Made by a program: the position numbers and the translations under genes. This document shows positions 7,638 through 32,506 of a stretch of 64,000 nt of DNA, piece by piece. Source of the DNA: Aplysia californica. Its lineage: Eukaryota. The notes below the pieces were generated by a model, which saw nothing but the letters and a program-made list of their open reading frames with translations, was not told the origin of the DNA and did no database searches. Location: the NCBI RefSeq assembly GCF_000002075.1, contig NW_004798235.1, positions 108,285-172,284 on the forward strand, written 5' to 3'. How positions within the stretch are numbered: position 1 is the first letter of the stretch; every line of letters begins with the position of its first letter.

Positions 7638-10600
7638 ATGGCACCCACAAAGGTAACTATATCTTATTTTGTTGCAAAGTAATTTGTGCTTTTATCACAT
7701 CATAGGATAATATTGTTTTTTCATTAAGCCATCGTGGGTTTTTTTTTGTTTGTGTGAATCATTTTCTGTTTTTACTTGATAGGTTGTGTGGTTTGACTCT
7801 TGACAAGTTCAGTGGATATGTTCCGCCCCCACATAAAAAAATTGAGGTGGTTTTCTAGAAACTTGATGGTGATGAACATACACACACAGTCACATGTGCA
7901 CTGACACACCCTGTGATGAGCAAACAAGAGCCAGACAGGTGACATAATATGCTCCAATGGTGAAACAGCCACTACAGTCGATGTGGGTTGTCTGTCTTCA
8001 GCTTCAGTGTTGACTTAAGTTAGGTTGTTCATGTGAAGTCACTTTTTTGACTCTGTCCAAGGGGCAGCATGGTAAAGTTTTTGTCACAAAAAATGTAGTA
8101 CATTAGGCGATTGCTTATATAGCATGCATCTCAAGTGACAAGAAAAGCATGTTCTTATGAGAACAGTAATGTGCTGTTCAGCAAAATTTGAAGTGGAGTG
8201 ATCTAAAGTGAAGTATTTTATTGAATTTCATTGATTTATGTGGATCACCTTGCATCTGATTACTTGCAGTGGGTTGCGTCATTGAGCTGAGCTTGCCCCA
8301 AGGGGTGGAGAAAATGACCATCATAATTACAGCACAGCCCTCTCACACTGTCCTCCTGCCACACATGGCCACTGGATGGCTTTCAGTTTCACACCTTGCC
8401 CCTAAATATCTTTTTCTCCCTGCCAAAGTCACATCTTCAAGTAATGTTTTGCTTGCATGGCTTCCATCAGTTCCAAGAGAAATGAGTAATTTTATGGCTG
8501 GTCTGTTTCTGACACAAGCGTAGGAATGATTGTGCTATTAGTTATCAATTTGGAATCTGCTCTTGGAAGTGATAAAATTATGTAGGAAAAAATTAGATTC
8601 TGCTTAAGGCAGATCTTGCTTTTGTCGAGCATGTTATTAGCTGGAGACCACTGTATTATCAAAAGGGTTGAAACTGCAAAGATATACAATTAAGATTATT
8701 TAAATGCAGTGTGATTAGTTTCGGAATGTTTGCGACTTCAACCTGCTTGTTTTGTTGCCTTGTATTTGATTCCCACTTCTTGCTTTGATTTGTTTCTCTT
8801 GTTTTATTTCAGAAGGTACTTCGAGTGAAGGAAAGTGGAATTCCATCAGAAGAGGGCAGCAAATGGAAGTATTTTCACATATTTATTACAATATGTGGGC
8901 CTTTATTCCTGATTTATCTCAATCTCCGCTGTGAAAAGGTTAGTTGTATTGAATTCAAACTTAAAGTGTTTAGTACTAAAGCGAGTTGTCGGCTTTGTCA
9001 TCAAATTCTTTCATAATGAAGTTTTAAACGTATTACATGTACTGGCCTAAAAATATATGAGCAAATAATCCACCCACACGAGGAGGGGTTGCACTGATTT
9101 AATTTATGAGAGTACAACCAGTGAATTCTTTTGCGCATAGTTTCTCATTATTTTACAAGAGGGATGTGGAGTAAAATGGATGCCTTTGCTTGGCATCTTC
9201 GTGAACAATCTGAGGTGGATTCAATGTTAGGTTTTAAATTTTAATCTCCTTCTGACCATTGTGGACTCTTGTTCAAACCAACAGACTGTTTTGTGCTTTG
9301 AGTAGTCTAATGTTTGTCATTTTTAACTGTTAAAAATGTTAAATTTTTGTTGAATGTGAATCTTATTGTTGAAGAGTTTTTAATGTTTTAGTAAAGTCTC
9401 ATTCCAGTGTTACTTTATTCCCTTCTTGTTTTTTCAACAGAACCAGTGTGTCTTGTTCCAGCTTCCTTTGGTTGTCCCCACCCATGTTGGTGCATACTTC
9501 TCAACTACTGCAACGCTCATGCTCTTTGGATTCTTTGCACTTGTGTTTCTCTTCAGTTTATCAGCTGCTCATAGCAGTAAAAAAGGTATTTTTCCTTTCT
9601 TTTAGAACAGAGAAAAGTGAACTTTCAAAAATTTAATTTAGTGCTTCTGAAAGTGTAACAATCTTAAACTTATTAAATTCTCATCACTTTCTTGATTGAC
9701 AACACATGTCTGACGTTAATGGGATCAATACGAATTTAAAGAAGGCACTTTTTCCTGTCCCATCTGTTTCCTTGAAAAGTTTAATATATGGATGAATCAG
9801 GAATTCTTTTGCACCTTCCTTCTGCAAACAAAGTAAAATGCTGTGTATTCTTTGCACACTGGTTAATATTTTATTATAGTCTCAAAACTCAAAAGCCAAG
9901 GAATGTTGAACGATAAGGGCTGAGTGTTTAATAATTCATCTTCATTTTGTTATTGTAAAGTTTGTTTGCTATTGCAACCCTTACTGATTTATATTATGAT
10001 ACTTGAATCTAAGGTTAATGTTGTTTTATTTAGATATATATGCATATATTGATATTTGTTTTTTGCTTTGCTACTGAATTTTGGCAGTTTTATCAATGAC
10101 TCAATTCCCTTTTTTTTTTCATGCCAATTTCAGAGCATCATAATATGCCCCCTGGGTTTTCTTCTTTGATGTGCACGAGCTTGTTGTTGTTTGCTCTGGC
10201 CTATCTGAAGCCGGCTTATATTCACCTGGCGCATGCTGAATATCTGAGGCTTCTTACAACTGCCACAGTCTTTTGCTTCGTATTCAGTGGAATCCTGGCT
10301 CTTTTGTCACGTCTGAAAATTGGAGGACAATTTGGTAAAACAGGTGGGTTGGTGTGTTCCTCACTTTGTTACAGTTCATATTTTGGTTTAAAAAAACCCA
10401 ACAGCCCAAGGTTTTCGAGTGATGGTAATCTGTATTAGTCTGATTCGGCACTTATATGACTTAATTGTGTTGGAGTGCTGTATATATTCTGAGGGGGTTT
10501 TTTTTTGGGGGGGGGGTTGTTGTGTTGTTGGGGGTTCTGTTCATGCTATTTTCTTAAAATTTATGGAGACGTAACCTTTTTAGGGTTTTTGAAAAAGGTT

Positions 10601-13600: not shown

Positions 13601-14832
13601 AGGCATACAGTAAGTATGGTATGTTATTTCTTTGTGTAATGTGCTTGAAATTTGTCAGCTGATTGGAATGGCTGTTTTTTGAACATTTGTGCGCAGGTCT
13701 GAAGTCCATCACTGTCCCAGGTCGGCGGCTGTTGATCAGTGGGTACTGGGGAATTGTTCAGAAACCTGACTACCTCGGCTACATGATTATCTGGCTCTCT
13801 TGGATTATAGCTTGTGGTAAGGAGCAGAAACATTAAGATGACCAACAGTTGGAGAATTATTCTTATAAATCTTAGCTGTTCTTGAGTTAACTTGGATGAT
13901 GTTTGGGAACTGTGTAACACTTTGAAGTCACTTGGCGCAAGAATGCGACGGTGAAAATTATCTGTTCTGATCACCTGGTGCAGTTCTGCGCCAGGCCCGA
14001 AAAGTCTGTTGCAGTCACTCTCCTGGCTGGGTGACCAGATGGGTTATTTTGTACTGCTGGCTGTGTGACTGCAAAGTGTTAAGGCAGTCCCAGTAGAAAA
14101 TGTAATTTACTCATTCATCCACCTGTTTTTGTTTTGTATTGCTCATCTCATGAGTGGGAAAGCACTTGTCAGTCACTATTTATTTCAGTAGAAAGTTAAG
14201 TTTTGATAAAGACTGAACAAAATGGAGAAATAATGCTTCACAGTGTCTGGGATCAAGATTTAGTTTGAAGTGGGGTTACTGGTTTCACAAACATAATTAT
14301 GTTCACCCTGAGGGTAGCCTGTATATAAAATGTCTTTATTTGTGGGAAGGAAAGATAGTATGGGTAAGGATTTCCGTTAAATTAATTGCTATATTCGTGT
14401 ACATGATTCATGGAGTTGTCAGTGTAACAACATGCAGCAGTTTTTTGTGCAGTTTTAGATTGATAGGTGTTGACCAGTGTTTTTTCATGGGATGAACAGG
14501 TCAACATTGAATGGTAATTACGAGGATGGATGAATTATGAGAGGTTCCAGTCAGAAATCTCTAAATGAAAAAAAAGGAAGAGGGTCAGGGTTGTGTGAAT
14601 TATTGTTCTGTAGACTCATTGAATGAAAAATTCTCCCTTTAGATCTTTCCAAAACCCTTTTCTTGTCTCTACAGGGCTGAGTGGTCTCTCCTTGGTGGTA
14701 CTGACCATCATATACATCACCATGTTTGTATGGTTACACCAAGCAGCGCAGGTAAAAAAGACCAAGTATCACTCTGGATGGACGCGGTACATAAATGTGG
14801 TGCCCAAAAAAGTGATCCCCTACGTATATTGA
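7638..14832 (+). CDS. Divergent ERG4/ERG24 (LBR/TM7SF2-like) membrane protein, ~413 aa, probably catalytically degenerate
   Basis: Exons 7638-7652, 8813-8938, 9441-9585, 10134-10343, 11022-11245, 11826-11994, 12475-12549, 13697-13816, 14675-14832. All GT-AG, phases compatible, 1242 nt with no internal stop. Contains LLISGYWGIVQKPDYLG and C-terminal KYHSGWTRYINVVPKKVIPYVY. Intron positions and phases match the downstream LBR. Confidence 0.88.
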
Positions 14833-15545
14833 GAATGTTGGAGGGCACCACGGCTTGAAGTTCAAGGCGAGAACAAATAACTTGAGCCTTGAGGAGAATG
14901 TTGTTTTTTGTTTTAACTGGCAGGTGCTTTACAGTAAAAGAGATGATGGTGAATATACCATGGTTGTTTTGTCAAAGGCAAGGCATGCAGGTTGTTTTTG
15001 TCATAACATTTGAAAAATGAATCCTTTTTATTTTCTCATAATGGGCAATGATACACACACAAGTCAGCTGGATCTATGTTAAAAAAGCCTTGTTTTAAGT
15101 ACATAGTGAAGGTTTTGTGCTCAGCAGAAATTGGTCATCTTGATATCATCATCAGTAATATTTAAACTGCTGAGGTGTAGTGTGTGCCAGTTGACTGGTT
15201 GAATGAAGGTTAAATTCATGGTTTGAATTATTATGAGCTGCACTAGTGTGTACTATGTATAGGGGGTAAAATTTGTCAACCTTGATGGAAGAGATAATGT
15301 TTGTCCACATGTAGTCCTCAAATATTTGATAAGTTAAAAGAGTCAAAACTTTTCATGTTTGCTTCTCCTTATCAGTCCGACTGTCATTGGTTGTGGCTTT
15401 TTGTTGTGTAAATTTGGGGTAGTGATTATTTGGAGCTGCTACCGAGTTCCTGAGGTTTTAAGGGTGCGTTGCTGATATTCACACATTATTTCATCTTTTT
15501 TTCACAGTCCTATTTCAAGTCACCTGTATGTTTTGTAATGAAAAA

Positions 15546-15651
15546 AATAAATGTATTTGCCATCAATTTCAAATGAATTTTTTTTTTAATGACCAGTTTG
15601 TCTGTACTCAGAATTTTGTATATATATTGCATTTTACAGAAACCGAATAAA
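15546..15651 (+). terminator. Candidate poly(A) signals of the LBR-like paralog
   Basis: AATAAA at ~15546 and ~15646 followed by GT/T-rich sequence. Confidence 0.5.
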
Positions 15652-16629
15652 ATGTTTCCTGCAAAAAAATTGCTAATGCCATTGTGTTCTTGTGGATTCT
15701 TTTTAAAAAATTTATTTCAACCCTCTTGGATATTTGATGTTATTTTTTGTCTTTGATCTAGATCTAATTACTCTTTCTTTTTTCCACAAAAATTCAAATT
15801 TTCATGTCACTTTTTGATCACAGAGTGTTGTTTTAAATTTTGTATTCCACGTTGGGTGCGTTTGTTGTAGTGTTTTTTATTTGTAGTCTTTAGCTTATTT
15901 TATAATAATTACACTGGTTTTTCAAAGCAGCGTAAAAATGTCTGTTATTAGTTCCTTTTACTTTTGTTAATATTTGTTTATTCCCTGGTAGTCACTGTGT
16001 TTACATTTTGGGAATTGTTATTTGTTGGGCTTCAGACTATTGTCCTTGCATTATAAATTTGATATTGATTGTTAATAAGCTATGCTTTTCTCTCTTATTC
16101 AATATTGGACAATTTTTAAAAATTTCTTGGTGGTTTCTACAAGGAATGTTGTAAAGTTTGTGTGTGCATTTGGGATAAGCAGTGAATATGGATGTTATTT
16201 TTAGCATTTCTGTTACCCCAACCCTTTTTTGTTTTGTTCACAGGTAACATTCTTTCAACTACATAAAAAAGATGCCAAGCCCAAAGAAGGTAAGATATCT
16301 TTTTCTTTTGAGCCTTGCATTTTTTAAAGTAGTGACTCGGAGCACAGAGCTGAGATGTTGTGTCAGTATATGTCAGTAAGATATAATTTCTGACACTGAA
16401 TCCAGTCAAGGAAGACAAGAGACACAGTTCTTGGGACTTCGTCACACAGACTCTTTTGCATACAGCTGTTTTCCAGTCCTTTTTCAAGCATTCAAAACAT
16501 TTTCTTAAACTTAAAAAAAGCCTCATAGACTTTGCGCATGCCCACTTTTCTATGTTGATTTAGCTTAGAGTCTGCATACTTATTTCATGGATGCTTAGCT
16601 TACTTACTTTACTTTTCCTTTTTTCATTC

Positions 16630-17830
16630 CACTGGTACCACTGCTTTGTAACAGAGAGAACTCTGAGAGTGCTGTTTACAGAGTTGATTCAGGGATGTCT
16701 TTGTCTCTCTGTGCTTCTCCAACCAGAGTGTCCCGTGTTGTAGGCTTGCAGTGCTGTTTGGGAGGTGGCGGAACCATTTTACTCTCTGTTGTTCAATATG
16801 GTGGAGGACTGGTGTTGTTCCTGACCTGGTCTCTCTTGGTCTTGTTCATTATTCTCCTCAGACATTTCATCTCGCAGGTGGTCAGTTTCTTTTCCTGTGT
16901 TTTGGTCAAGGGTCAAGTTTGTCTCTGATAAATGTGGAATTGATGAGTTTCCCTTATTGTCTATTGGGAAGTTTGTGGGTGGTTGGCGGGTGCTCTGGTG
17001 CGGTTGGCGTCTTCTTTCCTATCAAACTTCTGTTGTCCTGATCTCCCCTTCTTCTTTTTTGTGTTTGTTACTCTCTTGTAACACCTTTAATCTTCTGGCG
17101 CTCATATGACCTTATGCAGTTGCGAGCGCCGTAAAACCTCTGCTTTTAAACAAACATGTGGAATTGGTGAGTTTTCCCTTATTGTCTATTGGGAAGTTTT
17201 GGGTGTTTTAGGAGAAGTGTTAGTGGATAACTGATATTGTGTTTACTTTCTGGCGTCAAATTTCAATTTGTTTTTCTACTAAATTATCTTCTAAAAGAAT
17301 TCTGCCTAAATATTTGAATTGACTGGCTAGCTTCAGTTTGGATCTGTTGATATTGGTTTCAAGTGCTACGGGTTTCCTACAGGTACTCAGAACCTCTGTT
17401 TTGCTCACATTAATTTTCATACCGCTTGCAGCAAGCATTGATCTGGTATATCTATATTCTTGTAGCCCAGCTACATCCCAGTATTCCCTGTTAATTATTG
17501 ACTTGCTTGTTGGTGAACAATAACTCATTGAGTGGCTCAGAGTCTGGGTTAGCTGCAGTTGTTATCGGTCCAAAATGATGACAAAAACAGAGGGGTGAGG
17601 ACACAATCCTGCCTGAATCCGGATGCTACTGGGAACCAACCAATCAGATGTGCCACTAGTGGTGTGGACTAGGATGCTCCTGCTGTTATTGTAAATTGTT
17701 CTGATGTTGTCCAGCATCTGCCCCTTGGTATCATACTAGTGCAGCTTGTCTCTGTTGATCTTGTGGAAGGCTTTTTCTTTGTCTGTGAATACCAGATGGA
17801 GATGTTTAATAAGTATTCTGCAGACCTCCC
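16630..17830 (-). mobile_element. Decayed RTE-clade LINE reverse-transcriptase fragment
   Basis: Minus-strand remnants such as GMKINVSKTEVL...FKYLG and EMKCLRRI, with frameshifts. Interrupted by the 175-bp retroposon. Confidence 0.7.
16975..17150 (+). mobile_element. ~175-bp SINE-like retroposon, GGCGCTC/GAGCGCC hairpin variant
   Basis: Starts TGTGGGTGGTTGGCGGG, ends hairpin + GTAAAA. Flanked by a ~44-bp direct repeat. Confidence 0.8.
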
Positions 17831-18099
17831 ACTCAGTTACAGGGTTCTTTTTTTCACTGCTGTTGTGTCTGAATTTGGGTGTTTTGGGGGTTGAAAAAAA
17901 CAAACTTCTTGTATATGTGCTGTGTAAAATTTGTGCAGATATTTACGAGTCTAGCCAAGATTCTTATTCTTGAATGTTCAGTTTGTCAAGTAGTTCTATT
18001 TAATCAAGTGTCAGTACATTCCATGTTTTTAAAGTTTTTGTCTGTTTTTATAGAAGCATGCTTTGACTGTCAGTTTTATCAATGGTGTGCTGGTAGATA

Positions 18100-18375
18100 G
18101 TTGCGCCTTCTTTCTCATCAAATATCTGTCTTCATCTCTCCTTCTTATTTCTGTTTGTTATTCTTCTGTAACACCTCTAATTTCTGGCACTTATATCACC
18201 GTGGGTTGTTGGCGGGTGCTGTGGTGTGGTTTGTGCTCCTTTCCTATCATACATCTATCGTCCTGATCTCTTCTACTTCTTTTCTGTGTTTTTTACTCTC
18301 TTGTAACACCTCTAGTCTTCGGCACTTATATGACTTATTGTGTTGTAAGTGCAGTAAAACTCTTACTAAAAAAAA
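18100..18375 (+). mobile_element. Partial plus full tandem copies of the 175-bp retroposon
   Basis: Same sequence as the copies at 22148, 62873 and 63494. Confidence 0.8.
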
Positions 18376-18872
18376 ACAATCCCAAAAAACTAATTGTATT
18401 GCAAGTGCAGTAAAACTGAATAAAAGATATGCGGTCGCTTATTTTTGTTAGCTATATATTACAAATGTGTAGAAACATGGCAGAGCCGGTTTAAACAACA
18501 GACGTAATCTGGGTTATTTGAGGTCCTACTTCTTTCCTTTCCCAGCTGATTGTTATTGTCTGTCTGTCTGTCTTGTGACATGACTTTGTTTCGGCGTGTG
18601 AGTTCCGCGCGTGTCGGGGACGGTCCGTTCACGGGGTCAACTTCAGTTCATGCACACTGATGGAAGCGTCTTTCGGGACTTANNNNNNNNNNNNNNNNNN
18701 NNNNNNNNNNNNNNNNNNNNNNNNNNNNNNNNNNNNNNNNNNNNNNNNNNNNNNNNNNNNNNNNNNNNNNNNNNNNNNNNNNNNNNNNNNNNNNNNNNNN
18801 NNNNNNNNNNNNNNNNNNNNNNNNNNNNNNNNNNNNNNNNNNNNNNNNNNNNNNNNNNNNNNNNNNNNNNNN

Positions 18873-18919
<47 letters not shown>

Positions 18920-20219: not shown

Positions 20220-20385
20220 ATGGTCATCTGTAGTGCAGTGGTTAGGCTGTTGCACGCAGGAGACCCAGAGTTCAATTCCTGAGTGGGGAGAAAATTTTGT
20301 GAGGTGCCACAGGTCTATTTGCTGGGTCTTTTTACTGGGATGTTTCCTTCTAAGCCCGGGCTGGTTGTGACAGGCGAGGAAGGAA
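20220..20385 (+). mobile_element. tRNA-derived SINE, degenerate
   Basis: A-box-like GTAGTGCAGTGGTTAGG and B-box-like GAGTTCAATTCC. Similar to 55960-56120. Confidence 0.55.
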
Positions 20386-20567
20386 GTCTGCCTCCTTCTA
20401 AATGATCTAAATTGTGTCCACGAGGATGTAAAAACACTTACATAAAAAAAAAACCACATTAATTTTCTATCATCTGGTGTGGGAAGAATTTTTTTTTTTG
20501 GTATGCTAGTTAGGGACGGGTTCTTTATCAGCGTCTGTTGTGTAGCAATAAGATGCTTCACTGTCGC

Positions 20568-23500
20568 ATGAAGGAGACTCGGGTGGTCTGTGGAGAGAAT
20601 GTGTTATGCTACAACTTTTTTGGCGGTTCCCAGTGAAATATTGTGTTGCTGCAGCTCTTGTTGTTGATATATTATTTCTCTTCAGATTTGTATTGTTTGA
20701 TAATAATATGTGATGCATTGTGGGGAAATCAGGCGCTCTTCAAAATAATGAAATCAATGAAAACTGCATTTTTCTGGCCGCTTGACAATATTTAAAAAAA
20801 ATTCTTAAAAATTTTTTTTTATCAACACCTTTAATGTTTGTATAAAAACACATTTCCATGTGAATTTTACTGAAAAAAACATTGATTAAAGGCGCAAAAT
20901 GTGTAAATTTTCATTTTTCAAGAACTCACAAGCCGTTGAAATTACCAAACTTTGACGGCCATTTTCTCGTGTATTCTACCTCTGAAACCAGGCGACCCCA
21001 CCTCCTTCAATTGCAAATATCTCAACTTCTGTTTAAGATAGATAAAAGGTATTTTTTTCATCGAAAGCGAGGCAAATAAATAAGCTTTCAGATGACACTT
21101 GTAACTCCACATGCCCAAAGATTGGCAAGCGCTTGATTCTACCGTGTCGTGACACAAATGAGGTTTTGGTGTTGCGGTTGCTACTTCACCCCCATTTAGT
21201 ATTCCAGATGTTTTGACCACTCTTTCATGTGTGTCCATTAATGTTATATCTGTTTGATGATTTTTAATGAGCTCTGTACTTTCTAATCTTCAGTCCAAGT
21301 CACCTGCGAGAGCCAGGACGAGAGCTCGCAGTAAATCTGCCTCTCGCAGCCGCAGCAGAAGCAGCGGCAGAAAAACTAAAGCCACAGCTGCCAAGGTCAC
21401 AGAGGTGAAAGAAGTTGTGAGAACTGTAAGTACTGCTGTGGAATTAAAAAGGTTGTTATTGATCTTTGGATGTCGGGGTCTTTGTCCTAGGTGCCATGTA
21501 ATGGTGTTAGCTGTTTTTGTTTTAGTAAGGGTTTTACGGCGCTCGCAACTGCATGAGGTCATATGAGTGCGCCCGGTGTTAGCTGATTTAGGAAAACTTA
21601 AAGGCTCAGATGACTGATATATTATTTATATTTTAACTTTTCTGTCAGATTTTATCCAAGAGTATGTGTGTGGTTAGAAGGGGCCCTTGTTCAGTGTGTT
21701 CTCAGTGTCTTTTAGTCCTCTAGAGGGAGAATGGGGATGGTTATCACTAAGTTTCTTGAGCACAATATGTTATGGTCCATTGTGGTGGTCTCATACGTTT
21801 ATTGTTATGTGCCATTCTCCAGTTTTGTGTTTGCTTTCGCTGAAATAAAGTTTTGGGCTGTCTGAAGGCTTTTATCAGGTACTTAGGTGAAATTAGCTTT
21901 ATTATTTTAATGATGGGGGGGAAAAGAACAAGATAACCACCCCCTTCTGTTTCCGTCAGGTCGTGTGCGATTTTTCATAACTTGTGTGAAATTGCTCATT
22001 TTTATTTGCATTAATTTGCATGTACTTGCTTGACGTATTGTAGATGACTTGAAAAAATATTTTTTTATTTGTGTGTTTGCTATATTTAATTTATTTGCCA
22101 CTGCCGGTTTATGATATCTTGATCTACTGGGGTCCTGGATACTGATTGTGGGTGTTTGGTGGATGCTCTGGTGTGGTTTGCTCCTTCTTTCCTATCAAAC
22201 ATCTATCGTCTTTATCTCCCCTCCTTTTATTTTGTGTTTGTTACTCTCTTGTAACACCTCTAATCTTCGACACTTATACGACCTTATTGTGTTGCGAGTG
22301 CCGTAAAACACTTATTAAAACTAAAAAGAATACTGATTTTTTCCCTCCCTGAAACTTTTATTTTGTTGGAGGATTTTGAGGAAAGCTTTTATTTTTTGTC
22401 ATGGAGTGGTATTCAGGTCTGGTCTATGATATTTTTGAATTGATAGCTTGTTTGATGATGATATATATTATAATAAAGCATAGCCATCAGCTAGTATCGG
22501 AACAATTGTAATATAAAAGTAATTATATCTATTCATTTAATTTATAAAGCACAATATATCCTTACTGGGTAGCAGACTTTAGGGGCTGTTTGATTTATCA
22601 TTACCCTCCTGGTTGATCATATGACATTCTGAAGTATTCTCACATTACTGGAAGGCATTGAGGTGCGAAGTGCTTATTGTTATTTGACAGTAATTTCAGG
22701 GTACCCATTTCCATCGGGGTGAAATGAAGAGAATTTGTGTAAAGTGTCTTTCTCGATTAAACAATGTACGTCCGGGACATAGAATTCGGCTTAGTAAAAG
22801 TTTTACGGCTCTTGCAACACAATTAAAGTCATAGTGCTACAAGAGAGTAGCAACACTTTAAAGAAGGAGAGATAAGAACGATAGATGTTTAATAGGAAAG
22901 AAGCTGCAAACCACACCAGAGCACCCGCTAACCACCCACGACTAGAATTCAAACCTCGCCACATTAATTCTTGGTTATAAAAGTTAATATGAATTATAAT
23001 TCATATTTTGTGCTTTTCCCGGTCCTTCATTTTGTTGAACTTTACCTCCACTCTCCACAGTCGTCGAGAATCCCAACTCGTCGCAGCACGTCCAAGTCCC
23101 CGTCCAGAGTGAGGGTCAAAGAGTCTTCTGAGAAGTCTGTTGTGACCCAGTCTGCCGGAGGTGCAGCAGCAGCAGCATCAACGGTCACCGAGACCGTGGT
23201 GACCAGGAGGACGTACGTCTCGTCTGGGTCGTCCGAGGGCCAACAGAAAGCCTCAGTCACACCTGTTCGCTCGTCGTCCAGGATTGCCTCTTTGATCGAG
23301 AAGGAGGTAAGGAGCAGATGTTTTCTCTACTGATTTGTCTTAGCTGTCCCTGTGGTATTATGCAAGAAAAATTCTGAAATTATGCAAAATGAGCCCAAAA
23401 ATGTGAAATTATGCAATTCTGTTAATTTTAACACAGAATGATAAAGGAAAATAATCCGAAATTATGCAAAAAATGATCAAATTTTGCTATATTATGCGGG

Positions 23501-26500
23501 ATGCTTAAAACCACGGGGACAGTCTGAGTGCTATTAGGATTATGAAATAGTGGAGATATTCGGCATAGTTGATTCAGTTGATAGATGTTTTCCTATAAGT
23601 TTGAAATGTTCAAACAAAATGCAGAAATGAAAATACATTGCAATATTTTTTGTTGTTTATTTGTTCGTTTTGCTAAAAGCATTTACCTGACTTGGACTGG
23701 TTTCAGACAGCTTTATAAATTTTGCAAGTAAGAAAATGGTACAGGTAAACTTTAAGAATAATTTGTTTGACTTTTGCCCAGCAATTTCTCTATACTTGGA
23801 ATTTAATTAGCTCTGTTTGTGTATGGGAGCGTAAGGCAGTCTGAACATTGCACAGTTCTGAAGCACTAACTCATGTTTTTGTCTCTTTCAGAGAGAAGAA
23901 TCGTCTCGGATTCGAGAGCAAATGAAATCAGAAGTCATGGCTAATATCAAAACTCCAGAGAAGTCTGACTCAGAGGAGCGCAAACCTAAAGAAAAAGCTG
24001 TCCACTATGAATTCATGGGACCCATTGGAGCATTTCTACTTATATTTCTCCTCCCTCTCACTGTGTACTATGTGAACATGGCTTGCAGAAAGGTGGGTAA
24101 AAGTATTTTTGAACACTAGTATTTGTTTTGTTTGTTTTAGTGAGGTTTTACGACGCTGGCAACTGCATAAGGTCATATGAATGCCAGAGTATTTGTTTGA
24201 TTGTTGATGAAAAAATAACATAGGTATCAATGTTGCGTTTTCTGTAACGTTAAAAAATTGTGTGCATTTGCAAAGTACAAGATGTTCTTTCCTTTCAAGG
24301 GATAACTGTCAGTTCTAAAGTACAATAACTATTGTTTTCTTTAATGGGTCAGACATGAGACTGTCCTGGATGATCTCTCCGTTTTAACTTTGTCACTAAA
24401 GGATAAGAAGATCATAAAAATGTTCCAAATGAATCTTAACTGCTGAAAATGACTAGGCCAGAATAAATGAATCTTTATATATTTCCGAGGTCTTATTATT
24501 TATTTGTTCATCTTTGTAATTATTGAGTTGGATAGGGATGCAATGTATGTATGTCATCTGAGGTGGATTTCCCCCCTTACCTTTGTTTTGCATTTTTCTG
24601 AAAGTTTTTATCATCTCAGTCAAGTAGATGGGCTAGTCATTGGTTTTTGCTCTGTGTTACTGAAAGGTTGCAGCAAGCCACAGAGTTTATATTATCATTG
24701 CTTGTTTTTATATAGACTGATTATTGATGGGTTCCACTGGTAGGTCCTACTTTTCTCTTTTCCCTTTTTTGTTTCTGTCTACCTGTCTTACTTTTTCTCT
24801 GCACTAAATAAATGGCGGCGAAAGTGTCGATGTGCTTCTCTGTACTCCAATATAATGTAGATTGTATAAAAACATTTTCTATTATTGTAATGGATCTTGA
24901 TATGATATTGGGGATCTGTTTTAACCTGAACACATTTCAAAATAATATTTGTGGCTTTTTAATTCCTTAATGAAACTTCAAACTAAGGTTCTGTTTCAGT
25001 TTTGTTTTCTTTGTTCCCTGTCAAACCTAATTACCTGTAAATTGAGTGTATGTCAGTTTTATGCATTTCTTTGAAGTTTTAAGGGAACTGTGAACTTGAC
25101 CTATAAAAATATCATATTTTCTGTGTTTCGTATAAACATGTAACTACATGTACATTATATCATCATCTGATCTCGTCTCCCAGGGAAATTGCTCAGTCTT
25201 GGTCATTCCTAAGCTTCCAAGGAACATTGTGGCTGCATTTTTGGATGTTGAAGTCACTTTGATCTTCCTTGCATGGATTGCATTCCAAGCTCTCCTTGCT
25301 GTGCTGCCCATAGGCCGTGTGGTTGAGGGTCAGCCGCTCAAGTCAGGAGGTCGTCTCAAGTATCGATGCAATGGTAAGCTCAGGGAACTTTTGTTCATGG
25401 GGGAAGAGCAAAAAATGACAATGAATGTGGAAGAAAACGTTCTAGAAGTCTGAAGTTAGATTTAGGCTGGAGGTGGGGGGATGTTCTTCTTTGTCTTTGC
25501 TCTCTATGACATTGTTATAGTGACCAGCTAATGTTGCTCACTGTTGATGTAGAGAACCATTTGAGACCCTGGGATTTCTGTCGAGGTAGACTGGTGGGTG
25601 CAGCGGAGAGTAATACATGTTCTTGGAGAGATAAAAACAGGTGGGACAGCCTGTCTGGTGGCTTACTGAGAGTTTTGAGTATAATGGTTATGATAATAGT
25701 CATTGGAAATGATTTTCTATTTTTGGGGGGTTTGTAAAGGTATCCATGACTTTCTCTTAGAATGTCCTGTGGAGTCAACTGCTACATTTACCACTTTGTT
25801 TCTTGCTTTCTTTAGTGTTTTTGTATGAGAGTGTGACCTATGGTTTCACCTGCGGGAGGCAGCTGTGCATATTTGTCAGATGTTTGACCACGCCCAGCAC
25901 AAAAAAGGGCATATGGCTGATTGAATATTGAGGGACACTGGTCCAGTAAATGCGAAAGGAGACTTTCAGTAAAGAATGTAAATGGTGTGAGTTTCATTTC
26001 CAGTAAAAGCACACTATGGTTAATTAGAATGTGGAGCTGGTTTAAACGTGTGTTTCGAATGATTGTACTGACTATCAAGAAAATGGATACTGGGATACTG
26101 TAAATAGAGCTTAGTCACAAAAAGATGGAAGAAAGACCAAATTAGTATTTTACGAGTAATGTTATGTGCATACAATGTTGAGGAAAACTTCTGTTTTAAC
26201 TCCAAAGAAGATGAGTTGTGTCATGTCTTTAGTTCTCTTTGACCCAACTCAATACTTTATCTTCTTTTTTCCCCCTTTCCTTTTCAGGTTTCATTGCCTT
26301 TGTCATTACATTGTTGACCCTGGGAGCAGCTGTTTACTTCAAATGTCCCGTCACCCTTGTTGTGGACAAATTTTTCAAGTACATGACGGCAGCTGTTCTC
26401 TTTTCATTTACACTCAGCATATGTCTGTACGTCAGCTCTTTCTTGGTCAACAAGAAAAAGTTGGCTTCCACTGGAACCACAGGTATGAATTAAAATTTGT

Positions 26501-29500
26501 GCTCATTATTTTCCTTCATGTTGTGTTGTAGGTTCAAGGAGAAGTCATAATGGAAATGCTACTTTATTGATATTCACTTTGAAAATGTTTTTAACACGGA
26601 CCTAATGACGACCTAGCATATGGTACCAGATGGTTGTAAAGGGAACCACTCCGTTGGTAATTGCTGAGGTTCAGTTCCTTGTTTGATATTGGGGTTCTGT
26701 TTCTTGTTTTGACATTGTTTTAGTCTGTCTCTTTCCAGATTGAGAAAATAAACTAATCGAAAAGGGGTTGGGTTTCTTTCGTTGTTTAAATATTTTTAAA
26801 ATTCTGGAGCCAAGTCTTTGTATCATAATTACTTCATGTTTTTTCTGTCATAGTACTATTATTTTCATAGGTTGTCTAAAAAAAGCACTATGTTCTGTTT
26901 AAACAGTGATGCTTTGATAGTCATATTCACTTCAATGTTGTAACTGTGATGTGTATTTTCATTTCAGGCAATCACATCTATGACTTTTTTATTGGTCGCG
27001 AACTTAACCCAAGAATTGGACCCTTGGATCTCAAGTTTTTCTTTGAACTGAGGCCAGGCCTTATTGGATGGGTCGTGCTGGATTGGATCATGGTCGTCAA
27101 AGCCTACCAGGAAACTGGAGTGTGGCCTCCCAATCTGATCCTCGCCACGTTTTTCCAGACTCTGTATGTTGCAGATGCACTTTGGTTTGAGGTAAGCTGA
27201 CTTTTTGGTTGGATTGCTGTTCACAGACACTAATTATCAATCTACTTAATATTCTATTGTGGTGGGTGGTTGGTTGGTAGGTGCTCTGGAATGGTTTGCT
27301 TTCCTCTGACACATCTACCGTCCCGATCTCTGCTCTTTTTTTGTGTGTTTTTGTTATGATTTTGTAGCACCTGTAATCTTCGGTGCTTGTATGACCTTAT
27401 TGTGTTGCAAGTGCCGTTAAACTCTTACTGAAACGGAAAAAAAAAATTATCTTAGTTTTCCTTTTTGTCTGCATATCGCCATGGGCGCTCTGGTATAGTC
27501 TTCTCCAAACACTTCTTTTCAATGTTTGTGTTGCCCTATTCTGTTTCTGGTGAAAAGTCTGTTATTTTGCTGACCCTAACTGAATTATGAAAGTCAACTG
27601 GGCCATCTGTCTGATGAGTATTTGGTTGATTTTAAGGGGGGGGGGGGGTGGTTCTGTTTACACATGATTTACATTCTGTTATGATGATATATGAAGAGTG
27701 GGGAACTGGTCAACTATAAACATGTCCGTGAAATGGAGGCATTTATGTCTTGGCCTTTATAGGTGTACTAAGTTTTATTTTTAGTATGGAGTACACTTTT
27801 TGAACGATATGCTTTATTATTGCGTCGACAGTTTGTTTAGCACTTTCTACATTTGGGTTTTTTCCTCCTTTTTTTCTTTGTAAAAACTAAATTAATATTC
27901 AGTACTTTGAAATTATTTTGATAACCTTTAAATTTTTTCCCTCCTCATGAAGGATGCTATTCTTACTACCATGGACATCATTCACGACGGCTTTGGCTTC
28001 ATGCTTGCCTTTGGCGATCTGGCCTGGGTTCCCTTCTTGTACTCCCTGCAACCACGGTTCCTGCTTGAGAGTGGGTTCACTTTGCCCTGGTACTGTCTAG
28101 CACCTATCGCCCTACTGAACTGTGAGTTTGCATTTTTTTTTCTTTTATAGGGGTTGATGAGAGATTTTTATTTAAATATCTTTGAATGATATGGCTACTC
28201 TCACTGCTTTTATTATTATGAAATTACAACTATTGAAATTTCATGTGTCAAATTTGGGCCGCAAGTCAGATTTGCCGCCAGGGGGAGGGGTTCATTTCTT
28301 CCTAAACAATCATTTCTGCTGTTTCATGGGCATATGTAAACAGAGCTGTAGAGCACAATTGCTGTGTGAACAGACATGCCAAGTTCTCCGATAAAATTTC
28401 TTAAAAAAAAATTTTGGGGGGGGGGGAACTATCAAAGAACCACATTTATTTATGCATAAAATCCATTTTTCTTCTCAGATTCCATTTACATCAGTCATAC
28501 GCAACTTAAAGTTAATATATAAAAAAAAGCACAGGTTTATTGCTATATTTGTAAGCCTTGTGGTAATATGAAGGTTTATTTGCAATATTTTAGCAACTTA
28601 TCTTAATGACTTGATAATATACTTTTTTTTTACTTGTATTTTTTTGCAATACACATTGTTATTTATTTGCCATGGTGAATTTACTGGGATTTTGGAAACT
28701 CCAATTTTAAAAAATCCAAACTGATTTTTAAGGCCATCTGCGGGTGAGATTTTCCCCATTTTTCCCCAGTTTGACCATACAGTTTTTCCTCTCCATTTTT
28801 GAAACCTACATCCATTTCCATCAAAGTTTCAAGCGTCCGTTTCAATCAATTATATTTCAAAGTCATTTAAAAATGGGTTAAAAAAAATATTTTGCAATTT
28901 TGGGTCATGTTTTTTAATATTTTCTCAATTTTTAAAAAATATTTATTTTTTCGACTTTAAATTACATCTTTTCTTTTCTTTTCCACCTGAATAGCTTCAT
29001 TATTTAACACAATGTACATCCAATGGAGACCTATACTGAAATAGAGCCCTTTTTGAAGATACTCTAAGATTAAACTTACAATCGGTGTTTTTGTTGGGAA
29101 TTTTGAGATTTTTTTGCTCTTCATCTATGTACACATTTCCAGAGTCCATAATTATTTTTTGAATAATAATATTACAAATCTGGCGTTATTTCTTCATTAT
29201 ATAGGTGTTGTAGTTTGTACTTGCTAAAAGTGAAAGCCAACGGACGAAAACTAAGAGAGAAGATAGCTTTTGAAATTTGATAAAATATCCAATATGGCGG
29301 ATGTTTGCTTGGTTACCATGGTAACCATGTGCTTATGATAATAAATAATTACTTGAATTAATTCTTTAATGTCTGACTAATATGAATATATCATCTTTGC
29401 TACATATAGTCAAGGGATATGGATTTTAGAAATTCCACCAGCAGATGGCCTTAAGAAGATTATGAGGAAGAATATTTCTGGTCATGAAGTGGTTGGCAGG

Positions 29501-32500
29501 TTAAAACTTTTCGTGGTAGGCCCTGCCCATTGATTCTAAGTTAAACTCAAAGGTGGAATTTCTTCCGTATTGAAGTTATAACTGATCTTTTTAATTTGGA
29601 AACTTATCTTGATATCTCTTTGTGTCTTAAGTTTTTTCAATTAGTCAGTGAGGTCAATGAATGATGATTATTATTTAATACTTTGAGGGATATGTCTATA
29701 AATGTTATTTCTTTTATTTCCTTCTAGTTGTAGGATTTGCAATCTTTAGGATGTCCAATTCCCAAAAGAACTTGTTCAGAAAAGACCCCAAGAATCCTGC
29801 TCTAGCTGGTGAGTGTTTTGTGCCTTTATTTCTGGTGTGATCCTGTGATCATTAGTAATATTAAAAAAGTCCTATCTTTTTGGACTCTGCTGAGGCCAAA
29901 AGAGCTGACCTGCTCTTACCTTTTTAACCCGAGTGATTTCCATGTTTCACACCGAAGAAATATATGGCTTCTACATTTTATAGCAACAATTTAATTTCTA
30001 TGCAGTGATTCACATTTTACTAAACAGGATATGATGATAGAATAAAGTCTAGTTATCAGATGTTTCAAGTTTTGGAAATGTTGACATTAATTGCATATTT
30101 TCCTTTACCCCAAGCTTGCTAAGTTTCTCCTTGTCTTAAGGTTGACTGGGTCATTGGCCCTGTGGAGAGGATTTTTAGTTGTTCAAGTTGTGTAGGAGAA
30201 AAACTTGATGGATGGGTGGTCAGCAGGAGAGTTTTAGAGGAAGAAGTTGTTGAATAGTATAGATAGTAATGCCGGGAATTGTTCTATGCTCTTTTTATGA
30301 CTTTAGATTATCATGACATTTTGAAGATTGATAATAGAAATTTAAAAAAAAATGTTTCCATTATGGTTTTGAAATCCTTGACTTTATTCAATGCACGTAG
30401 AGTATAAGTTACCAGAGTTGTTGAAAGGTTTTGATCAACAGGATAACACTGTTACTCTTTCACTTTCAGTAAACGTATATCAATGCCAGTGTTTGTTTTC
30501 GGTAGTTAACCTTTTCTATGGTTGTGTAGTGACGTGGTCCATCACAGTATGGGCCTTAATAAATGTTTTGAGTTGTATTTTTACTTTCCACCCTCACTGT
30601 TGTGAGTATTGCTGAACCTGCTTGAACAGCCACTTGTTCAAAATAATTACCTTTACAAAAGACCCCCCCCTTGTTTAAAAAAAAAATATACTGCTTTTCT
30701 CCTCGACAATTCGAAGGTTATGGGTTGCTACCTTCGACTATCAACTTCAGTTGATGATGTCTTTGTTTTTTTAAAAACGTTTTTACTGACTTCTTGCGTG
30801 GAAGGTGTGGCTTATTATTTTAATTCAACATAATATGCTGCAACTTATCAATCTTTCGTGTCCAGTATTTATCAAACAAGGACACACAGTATTGTTTGTC
30901 GTTTGGTCTATTCTCTTTTAACTTGAACATTCTTTTCTCCTATTTCTCCCCCCCCCCCCCCAATTTTCTCTTTGATTTTCATGTGTTCGTGTCTTCTACT
31001 CTTTTTTACCTGATCTCCCCTTTTTTTAAAGTGTCTTTTCTTTTTTGAGAAAAGGCGCAAATTAAGTGCAATGACCAATTAGTAACAGCTTAATGTAGAG
31101 ACGATTGTATTTTTTCACCAGGAATCGAGACTCTCCCAACTCAGTCTGGGAAGAAACTGCTTGTTGGAGGCTGGTGGGGTCTATGCAGAAAACCAAATTA
31201 CCTAGGGGATCTCATTATGGCTCTGTCATGGTCACTTTGCACAGGTAAGTGCTGGGCTCAATTTTTGTTCAGAATTATTGAGAGCAGTGTTTCTTAACCT
31301 GGGTTCTGTTGAATCAGATCAGTGAGTCAGTCTCAGGGGTTAGGCAGAGGTCAAGACACACACGCGCACACGCACACAAACTCACCATCACCCCAGCTGA
31401 ACCGAGAACTCTCTCTCTTTGCTTTCTGGTGGCCGCTGATTAAATCTCAGACATTGAGAAACTGACAAGATCTTTTGCCGTCTATGGCTGGTTACCTATT
31501 CCCACTTGGGTGAAGCAAGGAAATTTTGTGTGGAGTTCCTTTCTCCAAGGACACAATATTGGGCTGTTGGCAGGTTTCAAAACCTTTCAGTTACCAACTC
31601 AGCATAACTTTTGATGTTTCTTGGTGGAGGGGGTAGTGCCTGAAACATTGAGTTAATTTGCATTATAGAAGAAGGTTCAGAATGACTTGTTCTCAAGTCA
31701 TTCAGCTTCTTGTGGCTCCTAAAAGTTTATTACATACCATAAAACATGTGCCATTTTGAAGATAGAGCCTTTGATCTTGTGGTTAGAATGATAGAGAAAG
31801 GGAAGAAAATATGTGAATGGAAAAACCTAAGAAAATGTTACATATGCACCCAGAGCTGGGATGCTTACAGAGGGATTATTATACCTCATGCTAGTGTTGT
31901 CAGTCCATTTGTTTGTTTAGCCATCTGGGGGGAGTGGGTTCTTGACAAAAAAATATTTTAAAATAAAAAATAACCAATAAAGTTTTTAAAAAGCCAAAAA
32001 CAGTACAACTGCATGGCTTGACAATGTTTGATAATATGAGTTCTTCAAAAGACATCTTGAGCTTTTTCTGATCCTACAGGCCTATCCTTCATAAGCTTTT
32101 AGCGTTATTTTTTTTATAGTTGTTCTGTGCCGACGTCTGAATGAAAATAGTCTGTTTGTGTGTGCATGTGTGTGTATAAATTATATATATTGCATAAGAA
32201 GAAAGGAAGTAGTAAGAAAGGTTTTGAAAATGGGTACTCCAATGTAAAGCGCATTAAGCTACTTTTGTTGGAAATGCGCTATATTAATGTTATATATTAT
32301 TATTATTATTATTATTATTCCCTATTTGTTGTGTGTTTCTCCCAGGTTTCCACCACATAATTCCCTACTTCTACCCGCTGTACTTCCTGGTCCTCCTGGT
32401 GCACCGCGAGCGCCGCGACAACGAGCAGTGTCAGCAGAAGCACGGGGCTGCATGGGATCGCTACTGCGAGAGAGTCAAGTACAGGATCTTCCCTTACATC

Positions 32501-32506
32501 TACTGA
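20568..32506 (+). CDS. LBR: Lamin B receptor / delta(14)-sterol reductase, ~578 aa
   Basis: Exons 20568-20582 (MKETR, weak donor, least certain), 21294-21425 (RS-rich), 23061-23306, 23892-24092, 25184-25373, 26288-26482, 26968-27191, 27953-28121, 29728-29808, 31122-31244, 32346-32506; 1737 nt in frame. Intact [62 protein letters not shown] and YRIFPYIY motifs. Confidence 0.93.
22148..22328 (+). mobile_element. 175-bp retroposon copy with TSD ATACTGATT
   Basis: 9-bp direct repeat on both sides. Confidence 0.85.
22790..22940 (-). mobile_element. 175-bp retroposon copy with TSD-like TAGAATTC, inserted into a CORE-type SINE remnant
   Basis: Reverse complement of the family consensus, with TAGAATTC close to both ends. 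Confidence 0.75.
27262..27435 (+). mobile_element. 175-bp retroposon copy
   Basis: Family similarity including the 3' hairpin. Confidence 0.8.
28732..29450. mobile_element. Non-autonomous DNA transposon with TTAA TSD and GG termini (Kolobok-like) in an LBR intron
   Basis: TTAA-GGCCATCTGC ... GCAGATGGCC-TTAA, imperfect TIR of ~20 bp. Confidence 0.8.
32170..32320 (+). mobile_element. 3' end of an L2-like LINE with (TAT)n tail
   Basis: GTAAAGCGC...GCGCTATATTAATG-(TAT)n. Near-identical inverted copy at 40775-40950. Confidence 0.7.

What the first reader, a model, noticed from the sequence alone, without database searches (positions are those of the whole stretch)
7638..14832. Intact but catalytically eroded LBR twin: a candidate sterol-reductase pseudoenzyme in tandem with LBR
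Seen: a 9-exon, stop-free 413-aa ORF with the same intron positions and phases as the adjacent LBR (two exons identical in length, 224 and 169 nt), so a tandem duplicate. Its functional motifs are replaced: [16 protein letters not shown] -> EKSFPSAFYHGSCTTLT; [14 protein letters not shown] -> LKVLLYLPFFHSLP; RKPNYLGD -> QKPDYLGY; VHRERRD -> VWLHQAA. It also lacks the RS-rich nucleoplasmic domain. Established: these motifs carry the catalytic and NADPH-binding residues of ERG4/ERG24 enzymes, and human LBR N547D and R583Q are Greenberg-dysplasia alleles that cripple reductase activity. By my alignment from memory the paralog natively carries Asp at the N547 position and has no Arg at R583. Inference: very low identity with preserved frame, splice sites, hydrophobic helices and the C-terminal IPYVY points to long-term selection for a non-enzymatic or altered role (sterol sensor, scaffold or regulatory partner of LBR).
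Basis: partly seen in the sequence, partly recalled or inferred. Interest (0 to 1): 0.78.

Follow-up and report, generated by a model that had tools for sequence, protein, structure and literature searches.

The report
Catalytically eroded LBR paralogue in Aplysia
Next to the lamin-B-receptor gene of the sea hare Aplysia californica lies an expressed, conserved sister gene that keeps the sterol-reductase fold but has lost the residues that bind NADPH and do the chemistry. It is probably a 'dead-enzyme' or re-purposed relative, so far seen only in heterobranch gastropods.

Summary
Window 7638-14832 (+) encodes a 9-coding-exon, stop-free, 413-aa protein. Its seven shared intron positions and phases match those of LBR about 10 kb downstream, and three exons have identical lengths.

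- **Organism:** Aplysia californica.
- **Expression:** RNA contigs from two studies carry the exact splice junctions. One transcript ORF (P0029) equals the model 413/413. Two other polyA runs are silent on the exons.
- **Annotation:** RefSeq already holds the gene as "delta(14)-sterol reductase TM7SF2", in a form that skips exon 4.
- **Orthologues:** about 16 are known, and all the named ones are heterobranch gastropods. In Physella, Biomphalaria and Bradybaena the gene sits in the same tandem position in front of LBR.
- **Selection:** dN/dS is 0.11-0.31, against about 0.1 for LBR.
- **Fold:** it matches MaSR1 (TM 0.72-0.76).
- **Catalytic residues:** both proposed catalytic residues are gone (MaSR1 Y241, D363). 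N359 (human LBR N547) is an invariant Asp, and R395 (human R583), R323, R356 and R398 are lost. Several replacements are fixed across the family.

The most likely reading is a non-catalytic or re-purposed LBR duplicate that is kept by selection. Its function has not been tested. It is a new variant of a known kind and of moderate interest.

The parts
5402..5429 (+). 5' non-coding exon of the twin. Its 5' end is not defined.
   Evidence: Transcript contig L009 (SRR385813) nt 1-28 map here at 100%. A GT donor follows at 5430-5431.
7586..7652 (+). Exon carrying the start codon. The CDS begins at 7638. A 10-codon upstream ORF lies at 7593-7625.
   Evidence: L009 nt 29-95 map at 100%. There is an AG acceptor at 7584-7585 and a GT donor at 7653.
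8813..8938 (+). Coding exon 2 (TM1). It ends after ...RCEK, at the same place and phase as the LBR exon that ends ...ACRK at 24092.
   Evidence: (joint 8936/9439).
9441..9585 (+). Coding exon 3.
   Evidence: It corresponds to LBR exon 25184-25373 and has the same phases.
10134..10343 (+). Coding exon 4 (70 aa). It is absent from the RefSeq model P0012 but present in the RNA contigs.
11022..11245 (+). Coding exon 5 (224 nt, the same length as LBR exon 26968-27191). It covers the region of the GNxxYDFFxGxELNPR motif and the catalytic Tyr, both replaced here.
   Evidence: PF01222, E 0.0011; 30% identity to the LBR exon.
11826..11994 (+). Coding exon 6 (169 nt, the same length as LBR exon 27953-28121).
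12475..12549 (+). Coding exon 7 (75 nt, the same length as LBR exon 29734-29808).
13697..13816 (+). Coding exon 8. It holds the family's best-conserved motif, SGYWGIVQKPDYLGY, which takes the place of the canonical (S/G)[12 protein letters not shown].
   Evidence: PF01222, E 3.9e-6; 48% identity to LBR exon 31122-31244.
14675..15547 (+). Last exon. The CDS runs to the stop at 14830-14832, and the 3' UTR extends at least to 15547.
   Evidence: L009 nt 1164-2037 map at 100%.
21267..32506 (+). The neighbouring canonical LBR gene: RS-rich exons plus eight sterol-reductase exons with all canonical motifs intact. This is the likely parent of the duplicate.
   Evidence: (61-93% identity, exon by exon, to Physella LBR).

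Best explanation
The gene is an old tandem duplicate of the sterol-reductase half of LBR.

Origin (inferred): it probably arose in the stem of heterobranch gastropods.

History (shown by the tree and dN/dS): a burst of change was followed by purifying selection.

Product (shown): a 413-aa polytopic membrane protein, modelled with the 10-TM MaSR1 fold, that lacks the chromatin- and lamin-binding N-terminal domain of LBR.

Loss of reductase features (shown): the cofactor site has lost four arginines and gained an invariant Asp at the Asn that hydrogen-bonds an NADPH phosphate. Both proposed catalytic residues, Tyr and Asp, are gone.

Function (inferred): the protein most likely cannot carry out NADPH-dependent C14 reduction. 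Instead it probably works as a non-catalytic binding or regulatory membrane protein of the ER or nuclear envelope, for example binding a sterol-like lipid or a partner such as LBR through the remodelled pocket. Canonical C14 reduction is left to the intact LBR next door.
For: - Gene model and shared intron positions and phases with LBR.
- Spliced transcript: a 1654-nt contig in run X6 (word depth 407) joins exons 2-9 with no mismatch, a second study (X4) shows junctions 6-9, and transcript ORF P0029 equals the model 413/413.
- Single copy in the genome.
- Family: 16 members, all with open frames, 38-65% identical to the twin.
- Conserved order twin-then-LBR on the same strand in Physella, Biomphalaria glabrata, B. 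pfeifferi and Bradybaena.
- Selection: omega is 0.27-0.31 over 407 codons (Fisher p = 0.0008 against neutrality) and 0.11-0.19 for Aplysia against P0001. LBR in the same Biomphalaria pair gives 0.08-0.12.
- Fold: AlphaFold pLDDT 74.7; best PDB match 4QUV at TM 0.72-0.76.
- Residues, from the alignment to 4QUV with roles from PMC4951196 and PMC12489058:
  - Y241 becomes L232, and the position is variable in the family.
  - D363 becomes Y350, with no Asp in any of 12 members.
  - N359 becomes D346, invariant.
  - R395 becomes Q.
  - R323 becomes A.
  - R356 becomes Q.
  - R398 becomes Q.
  - D257 becomes F248.
- Of 47 columns invariant in an algal C14 reductase, four DHCR7 and two LBR, the twin keeps 20. 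About nine of the 27 replaced columns are fixed to one new residue or residue class across the family.
- Aplysia LBR keeps all the canonical residues.
Against: - No activity, cofactor binding or localisation has been measured.
- The best-conserved segment of the family is still the remodelled cofactor-site motif (SGYWGIVQKPDYLGY). Some pocket residues persist (K319, Y360, W370, W411, Y414 equivalents). That pattern fits a site that still binds a ligand, possibly a different cofactor.
- Three of 12 family members keep a Tyr at the catalytic-Tyr column.
- The catalytic roles of Y241 and D363 rest on modelling and mutagenesis reported by others, and the nicotinamide is not resolved in 4QUV (PMC12489058).
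- Expression was seen in two studies but not in two polyA runs of 2026. The tissue is unknown because the run names are coded.
Confidence: 0.6

Rival explanations
1. Re-purposed enzyme. The protein still catalyses a reaction on a sterol or terpenoid, but with another cofactor or mechanism. For example it could use NADH or a non-phosphorylated donor, or perform an isomerase-like step. It would then serve the unusual sterol and terpenoid chemistry of heterobranchs.
For: - The replaced positions are not free to drift. Many are fixed to new residues across the family, such as D346, W354, F248 and Q343.
- The remodelled cofactor-site motif is the best-conserved part of the protein.
- The changes remove positive charge and add an Asp, which in other nucleotide-binding sites goes with discrimination against the 2'-phosphate. 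That comparison is my own knowledge and was not tested here.
- Reviews note that Aplysia and other heterobranchs hold unusual sterols whose enzymes are unknown (PMC12350143; PMC7143877, listed).
Against: - Both residues proposed to protonate and orient the substrate (Y241, D363) are lost, and no obvious conserved substitute was identified.
- The catalytic-Tyr column is variable (L, V, F, I or Y), which is unlike an active-site position.
- No candidate substrate is known.
Confidence: 0.28
2. Ordinary TM7SF2. As its RefSeq name says, the gene is the molluscan orthologue of vertebrate TM7SF2 and an active C14 sterol reductase that is merely fast-evolving.
For: - It has the same architecture as TM7SF2: an LBR-like reductase domain without the N-terminal domain, about 415 aa.
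- Database names include TM7SF2, LBR-like and delta(14)-sterol reductase.
- The nearest ESM Atlas cluster is named TM7SF2 (score 0.96).
Against: - The catalytic and NADPH-contacting residues are lost.
- It is only 23% identical to its neighbour LBR, whereas that LBR is 38% identical to a green-algal C14 reductase.
- The family was found only in heterobranchs, although the same database holds DHCR7 from caenogastropods, vetigastropods, patellogastropods, bivalves and cephalopods.
- Its tandem position next to LBR points to a local duplication.
- The database names are automatic.
Confidence: 0.06
3. Decaying or non-functional duplicate. The gene is transcribed but is on its way to being a pseudogene.
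For: - Identity to the parent gene is very low.
- Motifs are lost.
- There is no signal in two polyA RNA runs.
- Omega is about three times higher than for LBR.
Against: - Reading frames are intact in about 16 family members from at least eight named species in distinct heterobranch lineages.
- Splice sites and synteny are conserved.
- Omega is 0.11-0.31, significantly below 1.
- There are 31 invariant columns across the family.
- The structure model is confident for most helices.
Confidence: 0.03

Closest known systems
Drosophila LBR (dLBR, CG17952)
   Same: It is an LBR-family protein with the ERG24-like membrane domain. [quoted passage not shown] 2004).
   Different: dLBR is the single LBR orthologue of a sterol auxotroph and keeps the lamin-binding N-terminal domain. 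The Aplysia gene is an extra copy without that domain. It sits beside an LBR whose motifs are intact, in a genome that also has DHCR7.
Vertebrate TM7SF2 (DHCR14)
   Same: It is a paralogue of LBR of about 418 aa that consists of the reductase domain only. Its exon structure resembles that of LBR (this last point is from my memory of Holmer et al. 1998 and was not checked here).
   Different: TM7SF2 is an active NADPH-dependent C14 reductase with canonical motifs, and in human it does not lie in tandem with LBR (from memory). The Aplysia family has lost those motifs. It was seen only in heterobranchs, so it looks like an independent, parallel duplication. Orthology was not tested directly.
MaSR1 / ERG24 C14 sterol reductases (PDB 4QUV)
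   Same: The predicted 10-TM fold matches (TM 0.72-0.76). PF01222 matches at 100 bits. Several pocket residues are kept (K319, Y360, W370, W411, Y414 equivalents).
   Different: Y241 and D363 (catalytic), N359, R395, R323, R356, R398 and D257 are all replaced.
Human LBR Greenberg-dysplasia alleles N547D and R583Q
   Same: The twin natively carries Asp at the N547 position. In the HMMER alignment it carries Gln at the R583 position. These are the two substitutions that strongly lower NADPH affinity and abolish rescue of cholesterol auxotrophy in human cells (PMC4951196).
   Different: In human these are single disease mutations in an otherwise canonical enzyme. Here they are part of a family-wide, fixed remodelling of the whole site.

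Membership tests
ERG4/ERG24 superfamily (Pfam PF01222) | Profile match above the curated cut-off (27 bits) | tested here: met
   P0029, which is identical to the model, scores 100.3 bits with E 1.4e-28. Orthologues score 74-94 bits. Single exons score 14.7-26.4 bits.
ERG4/ERG24 superfamily (Pfam PF01222) | 10-TM MaSR1-type fold | tested here: met
   AlphaFold model with pLDDT 74.7 and pTM 0.78. Foldseek's best hit is 4QUV, with E 8e-10 and TM 0.72-0.76.
Active C14 sterol reductases (ERG24 / TM7SF2 / LBR reductase domain) | Proposed catalytic Tyr and Asp (MaSR1 Y241, D363) | tested here: not met
   The twin has L232 and Y350. There is no Asp at the D363 column in any of 12 family members, and the Tyr column is variable. 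The residue roles come from PMC12489058.
Active C14 sterol reductases (ERG24 / TM7SF2 / LBR reductase domain) | NADPH-contacting Asn and Arg residues (MaSR1 N359 = LBR N547; R395 = LBR R583; R323, R398) | tested here: not met
   N359 becomes an invariant Asp. R395 becomes Q (HMMER) or L (MAFFT). R323 becomes A and R398 becomes Q. The equivalences come from PMC4951196.
Active C14 sterol reductases (ERG24 / TM7SF2 / LBR reductase domain) | C14 reductase activity (erg24 complementation, NADPH binding) | not testable with these tools
   This needs an experiment.
Lamin B receptor (LBR) | Nucleoplasmic N-terminal domain (Tudor plus RS-rich region) in front of the reductase domain | tested here: not met
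   The twin has only about 20 residues before TM1. The neighbouring LBR has RS-rich exons. The Pfam LBR_tudor profile was not detected anywhere in this genome by six-frame search, so that domain could not be assessed even for LBR.
Vertebrate TM7SF2 orthologue group | Orthology shown by a tree that includes vertebrate TM7SF2 and LBR and non-heterobranch LBR | not tested
In the available tree the family groups with heterobranch LBR and away from an algal C14 reductase plus DHCR7 (support 95/94).

The most novel reading that the evidence does not exclude
The family is a heterobranch-specific innovation. In this reading a sterol-reductase fold has had its NADPH site rebuilt into a new, strongly conserved ligand site, with an invariant Asp346, W354 and Q/H343 and a lost arginine cluster. 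The protein would then either sense or sequester a sterol- or terpenoid-like lipid, possibly regulating the adjacent LBR, or catalyse new chemistry in the unusual sterol and terpenoid metabolism of sea slugs and pulmonates.
Probability: 0.3. Interest if true: 0.65.

Novelty: new variant of a known kind. Interest (0 to 1): 0.5.

Why it matters
**Natural experiment on the fold.** The membrane sterol-reductase fold (ERG24, LBR, TM7SF2, DHCR7) is a drug and fungicide target and a human disease gene family. Here the two Greenberg-dysplasia substitutions, and more, have been fixed and then conserved over a deep gastropod divergence. The family therefore shows what this fold can do without NADPH chemistry.

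**Annotation.** It corrects the database names. 'TM7SF2' and 'delta(14)-sterol reductase' would wrongly credit Aplysia, Biomphalaria, Physella and others with a second C14 reductase when sterol pathways of molluscs are reconstructed. Whether and how molluscs synthesise sterols de novo is still debated (PMC12350143).

**Model organisms.** Biomphalaria and Aplysia are laboratory models, so the tests are feasible.

**Limits.** Loss of catalysis in a duplicated enzyme is a common theme, and Drosophila LBR is a precedent.

Tried and rejected
1. **Alignment of the twin with the eight LBR exons as separate rows.** MAFFT scattered the fragments, so the alignment (A2) was not used. I used mafft --addfragments in a script instead.

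2. **Fetching full-length LBR and TM7SF2 from other animals.**
   - The length filter of the search for homologous proteins excludes them for exon-sized queries.
   - The twin and its profile share too few words with them.
   - The third search, with the intronless ERG4_ERG24 ORF on another contig, returned only DHCR7.
   - The duplication could therefore not be dated against non-heterobranch LBR or vertebrate TM7SF2.

3. **The intronless ORF on G000:C1027.** I considered it as a possible 'true TM7SF2' or a retrocopy. It is DHCR7.

4. **LBR_tudor profile.** It found nothing in the genome, and a motif scan of 15600-21300 also found nothing.

5. **Rfam on 5000-16000.** No RNA family was found.

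6. **Li et al. 2015 (the MaSR1 structure paper).** It is not held under the id I tried. The residue roles are taken from two papers that cite it.

7. **P0009.** It is a low-complexity repeat protein and not a relative.

8. **The joined spliced model.** It was never sent to a search tool. Searches ran exon by exon by reference. Full-length steps used database proteins P0010 (412/413) and P0029 (413/413). The joined CDS was handled only inside scripts, for the frame check and the codon alignments.
Full report
**1. What is there**

The window is G000:C965:108285-172284 of a 927,310,431-base assembly in 4332 contigs. The organism is Aplysia californica. The RefSeq protein "delta(14)-sterol reductase TM7SF2 [Aplysia californica]" (P0012) is encoded here.

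Nine coding exons between 7638 and 14832 on the + strand give 1242 nt and 413 codons plus a stop. There is no internal stop, and all internal boundaries are AG/GT.

The model was searched exon by exon by reference. The joined model was never sent to a search tool. Full-length steps used two database proteins that turned out to be the same protein: P0010 (412/413) and P0029 (413/413). The joined CDS existed only inside scripts, for the frame check and the codon alignments.

**2. It is a duplicate of the neighbouring LBR**

The ERG4_ERG24 profile finds three loci in the genome:
- an intronless gene on another contig, which is DHCR7;
- the exons of LBR at window positions 25223-32503;
- exon 8 of the twin.

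Twin exons 5-9 match LBR exons in the same order at 26-48% identity. LBR exon boundaries were fixed at ...24092, 25184-25373, 26288-26482, 26968-27191, 27953-28121, 29734-29808, 31122-31244 and 32346-32503.

All seven introns shared with the twin have the same position and phase. Three exon lengths are identical (224, 169 and 75 nt). Even the first shared boundary is kept (…RCEK|NQC in the twin, …ACRK|GNC in LBR).

LBR carries RS-rich exons upstream, and the twin has none. Overall the twin is only 23% identical to the LBR reductase domain. That domain is 38% identical to a green-algal C14 reductase. The twin is single-copy.

**3. It is expressed and spliced as predicted**

Reads were laid on 8833-14832.
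- Run X6 (2011) holds one 1654-nt contig with word depth 407. It joins exons 2-9 at exactly the predicted junctions with no mismatch.
- Run X4 (another study) shows junctions 6-7, 7-8 and 8-9 in one contig and junction 2-3 in another.
- Two polyA RNA-seq runs of 2026 show no reads on the exons. Expression is therefore probably tissue- or stage-restricted. Run names are coded, so I cannot say where.

A 2037-nt transcript contig (L009, from SRR385813) encodes the model 413/413. It also adds three features:
- a 5' non-coding exon (at least 5402-5429);
- the true start of exon 1 (7586);
- a 3' UTR reaching at least 15547.

The RefSeq model of 343 aa is the same protein without exon 4, an in-frame skip of 70 aa. 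Both RNA contigs contain exon 4.

**4. It is conserved in heterobranch gastropods, in the same place**

An all-against-all HMMER search with exon 5 found nine significant proteins. The best was a 417-aa protein, 67% identical over the exon. Searches with that protein and with the family profile found 16 members of 227-454 aa, some of them partial.

The named members come from Aplysia, Elysia crispata, E. marginata, Plakobranchus, Physella, Biomphalaria glabrata and B. pfeifferi, Bradybaena and Candidula. All of these are heterobranchs. The rest come from unnamed transcript assemblies.

The next hit after the family is an algal C14 reductase at E 5e-26. The same database holds DHCR7 from caenogastropods, vetigastropods, limpets, bivalves, cephalopods, nemerteans and annelids. 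The restriction is therefore probably real. The search does depend on shared 5-residue words, however, so absence elsewhere is not proven.

In Physella, both Biomphalaria species and Bradybaena, the orthologue is followed on the same strand by a 559-571-aa ERG4_ERG24 gene. In Physella this neighbour matches the Aplysia LBR exon for exon at 61-93% identity. The pair therefore predates the split between sea hares and pulmonates. That this is an old split within Euthyneura is my own knowledge and was not tested.

**5. Selection**

| Comparison | Codons | dN | dS | omega |
|---|---|---|---|---|
| Twin, Biomphalaria glabrata vs B. pfeifferi | 407 | 0.016 | 0.050-0.059 | 0.27-0.31 |
| LBR, same species pair | 155 | about 0.006 | 0.05-0.07 | 0.08-0.12 |
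| Twin, Aplysia vs nearest relative (L008) | 412 | 0.24 | 1.3-2.3 (saturated) | 0.11-0.19 |

- The Biomphalaria twin comparison has 13 amino-acid differences. A rough Fisher test against neutrality gives p = 0.0008.
- Non-coding mismatches between the two Biomphalaria loci run at about 3%.
- Between Aplysia and Physella the twin is 50% identical and the LBR reductase domain 76%.
- In a maximum-likelihood tree the family is monophyletic (100/100) on a stem of 1.72 changes per site, far longer than its internal branches. It groups with heterobranch LBR and away from the algal C14 reductase plus DHCR7 (95/94).

This is the signature of a burst of change after duplication, followed by purifying selection about two to three times weaker than on LBR.

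**6. Fold kept, chemistry lost**

The full protein matches PF01222 at 100 bits. DHCR7 scores 232 bits, and the LBR exons sum to about 364 bits. An AlphaFold model built on the family alignment has pLDDT 74.7 and pTM 0.78. Its only clear PDB match is MaSR1 (4QUV), at TM 0.72-0.76.

Residue roles come from two papers. PMC4951196 equates LBR N547 with MaSR1 N359 and LBR R583 with MaSR1 R395. Both lie in the NADPH pocket, and N547D and R583Q strongly lower NADPH affinity. PMC12489058 gives MaSR1 Y241 and D363 as the proposed catalytic residues, plus a list of cofactor-pocket residues.

Using the HMMER alignment to 4QUV and the family alignment:

| MaSR1 residue | Role | Aplysia twin | Twin family |
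|---|---|---|---|
| Y241 | proposed catalytic | L232 | L, V, F, I or Y |
| D363 | proposed catalytic | Y350 | never Asp |
| N359 (LBR N547) | hydrogen bond to NADPH phosphate | D346 | invariant Asp |
| R395 (LBR R583) | NADPH pocket | Q384 (HMMER) or L382 (MAFFT) | Q or K (HMMER); L or A (MAFFT) |
| R323 | NADPH pocket | A314 | no Arg |
| R356 | within the conserved RxxNY motif | Q343 | Q or H |
| R398 | next to pocket Asp D399 | Q | no Arg |
| D399 | NADPH pocket | deleted or replaced | mostly absent |
| D257 | conserved, non-catalytic | F248 | F or Y |

The equivalents of K319, Y360, W370, W411 and Y414 are kept. Aplysia and Physella LBR keep every canonical residue.

Of 47 columns invariant in seven canonical enzymes, the twin keeps 20. 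About nine of the replaced columns are fixed to one new residue or residue class across the family. The best-conserved stretch of the family is the rebuilt cofactor-site motif SGYWGIVQKPDYLGY.

**7. Interpretation**

Shown:
- the gene is a real, expressed and selected tandem duplicate of the LBR reductase domain;
- it lacks the features on which NADPH-dependent C14 reduction is thought to depend.

Inferred:
- it does not reduce sterols at C14, a task left to the intact LBR;
- it serves a binding or regulatory role in the ER or nuclear envelope (confidence 0.6).

The main rival is a re-purposed enzyme (0.28), because the new residues are conserved rather than free. The readings 'ordinary TM7SF2' (0.06) and 'decaying copy' (0.03) are poorly supported.

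**8. Comparison with what is known**

- **Drosophila LBR** is the nearest precedent. It lacks C14 reductase activity yet is retained (PMC2478713). It differs in being the only LBR of a sterol auxotroph and in keeping the N-terminal domain.
- **Vertebrate TM7SF2** has the same architecture but is an active enzyme.
- **Literature.** Full-text searches found no paper on a molluscan LBR paralogue, and no paper that combines 'pseudoenzyme' with 'sterol reductase'.
- **Databases.** The gene is in databases under automatic names, so what is new is the reading, not the gene.

**9. Verdict**

Novelty: new variant of a known kind. Interest 0.5.

Limits:
- no broad tree with non-heterobranch LBR or vertebrate TM7SF2;
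- tissue of expression unknown;
- reads were laid only on 8833-14832;
- no biochemical data.

Noticed in passing
window 10134-10343: The RefSeq protein for this gene (P0012, 343 aa, named TM7SF2) lacks exon 4, an in-frame skip of 70 aa. Both RNA contigs include the exon. The RefSeq form is therefore either a minor isoform or a model error.
   Followed up: partly
window 5402-5429 and 7586-7637: The transcript contig L009 shows an extra 5' non-coding exon. It also shows a 10-codon upstream ORF (7593-7625) ahead of the start codon.
   Followed up: partly
window 10433-10632, 13233-13632, 13833-14232: Stretches in introns 4, 7 and 8 have very high word depth in RNA contigs (up to about 123,000), many loose ends, and reads in polyA runs. 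These are interspersed repeats transcribed elsewhere in the genome. No Rfam family matches them.
   Followed up: partly
L001:1674-3212 (-) = G000:C1027:60673-62211: Aplysia DHCR7 is an intronless 512-aa ORF with a signal-like N-terminus. It is well conserved across molluscs, annelids and nemerteans. Physella and Biomphalaria have several DHCR7 paralogues.
   Followed up: partly
window 15600-24100 (5' part of LBR): The Pfam LBR_tudor profile finds nothing in the whole genome by six-frame search. The RS-rich exons are clear (about 21267-21450 and 23040-23330). An assembly gap (18683-18872) lies in the region where a first LBR exon could be.
   Followed up: partly
P0008 and P0020 (unnamed transcript assemblies): These are the two most divergent family members (441 and 454 aa, about 40% identical to the twin). 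P0008 starts with an RS-like stretch (MAPRSRSRARKS) reminiscent of the LBR RS region. Their source organisms are unknown.
   Followed up: no
I did not examine it.
   Followed up: no
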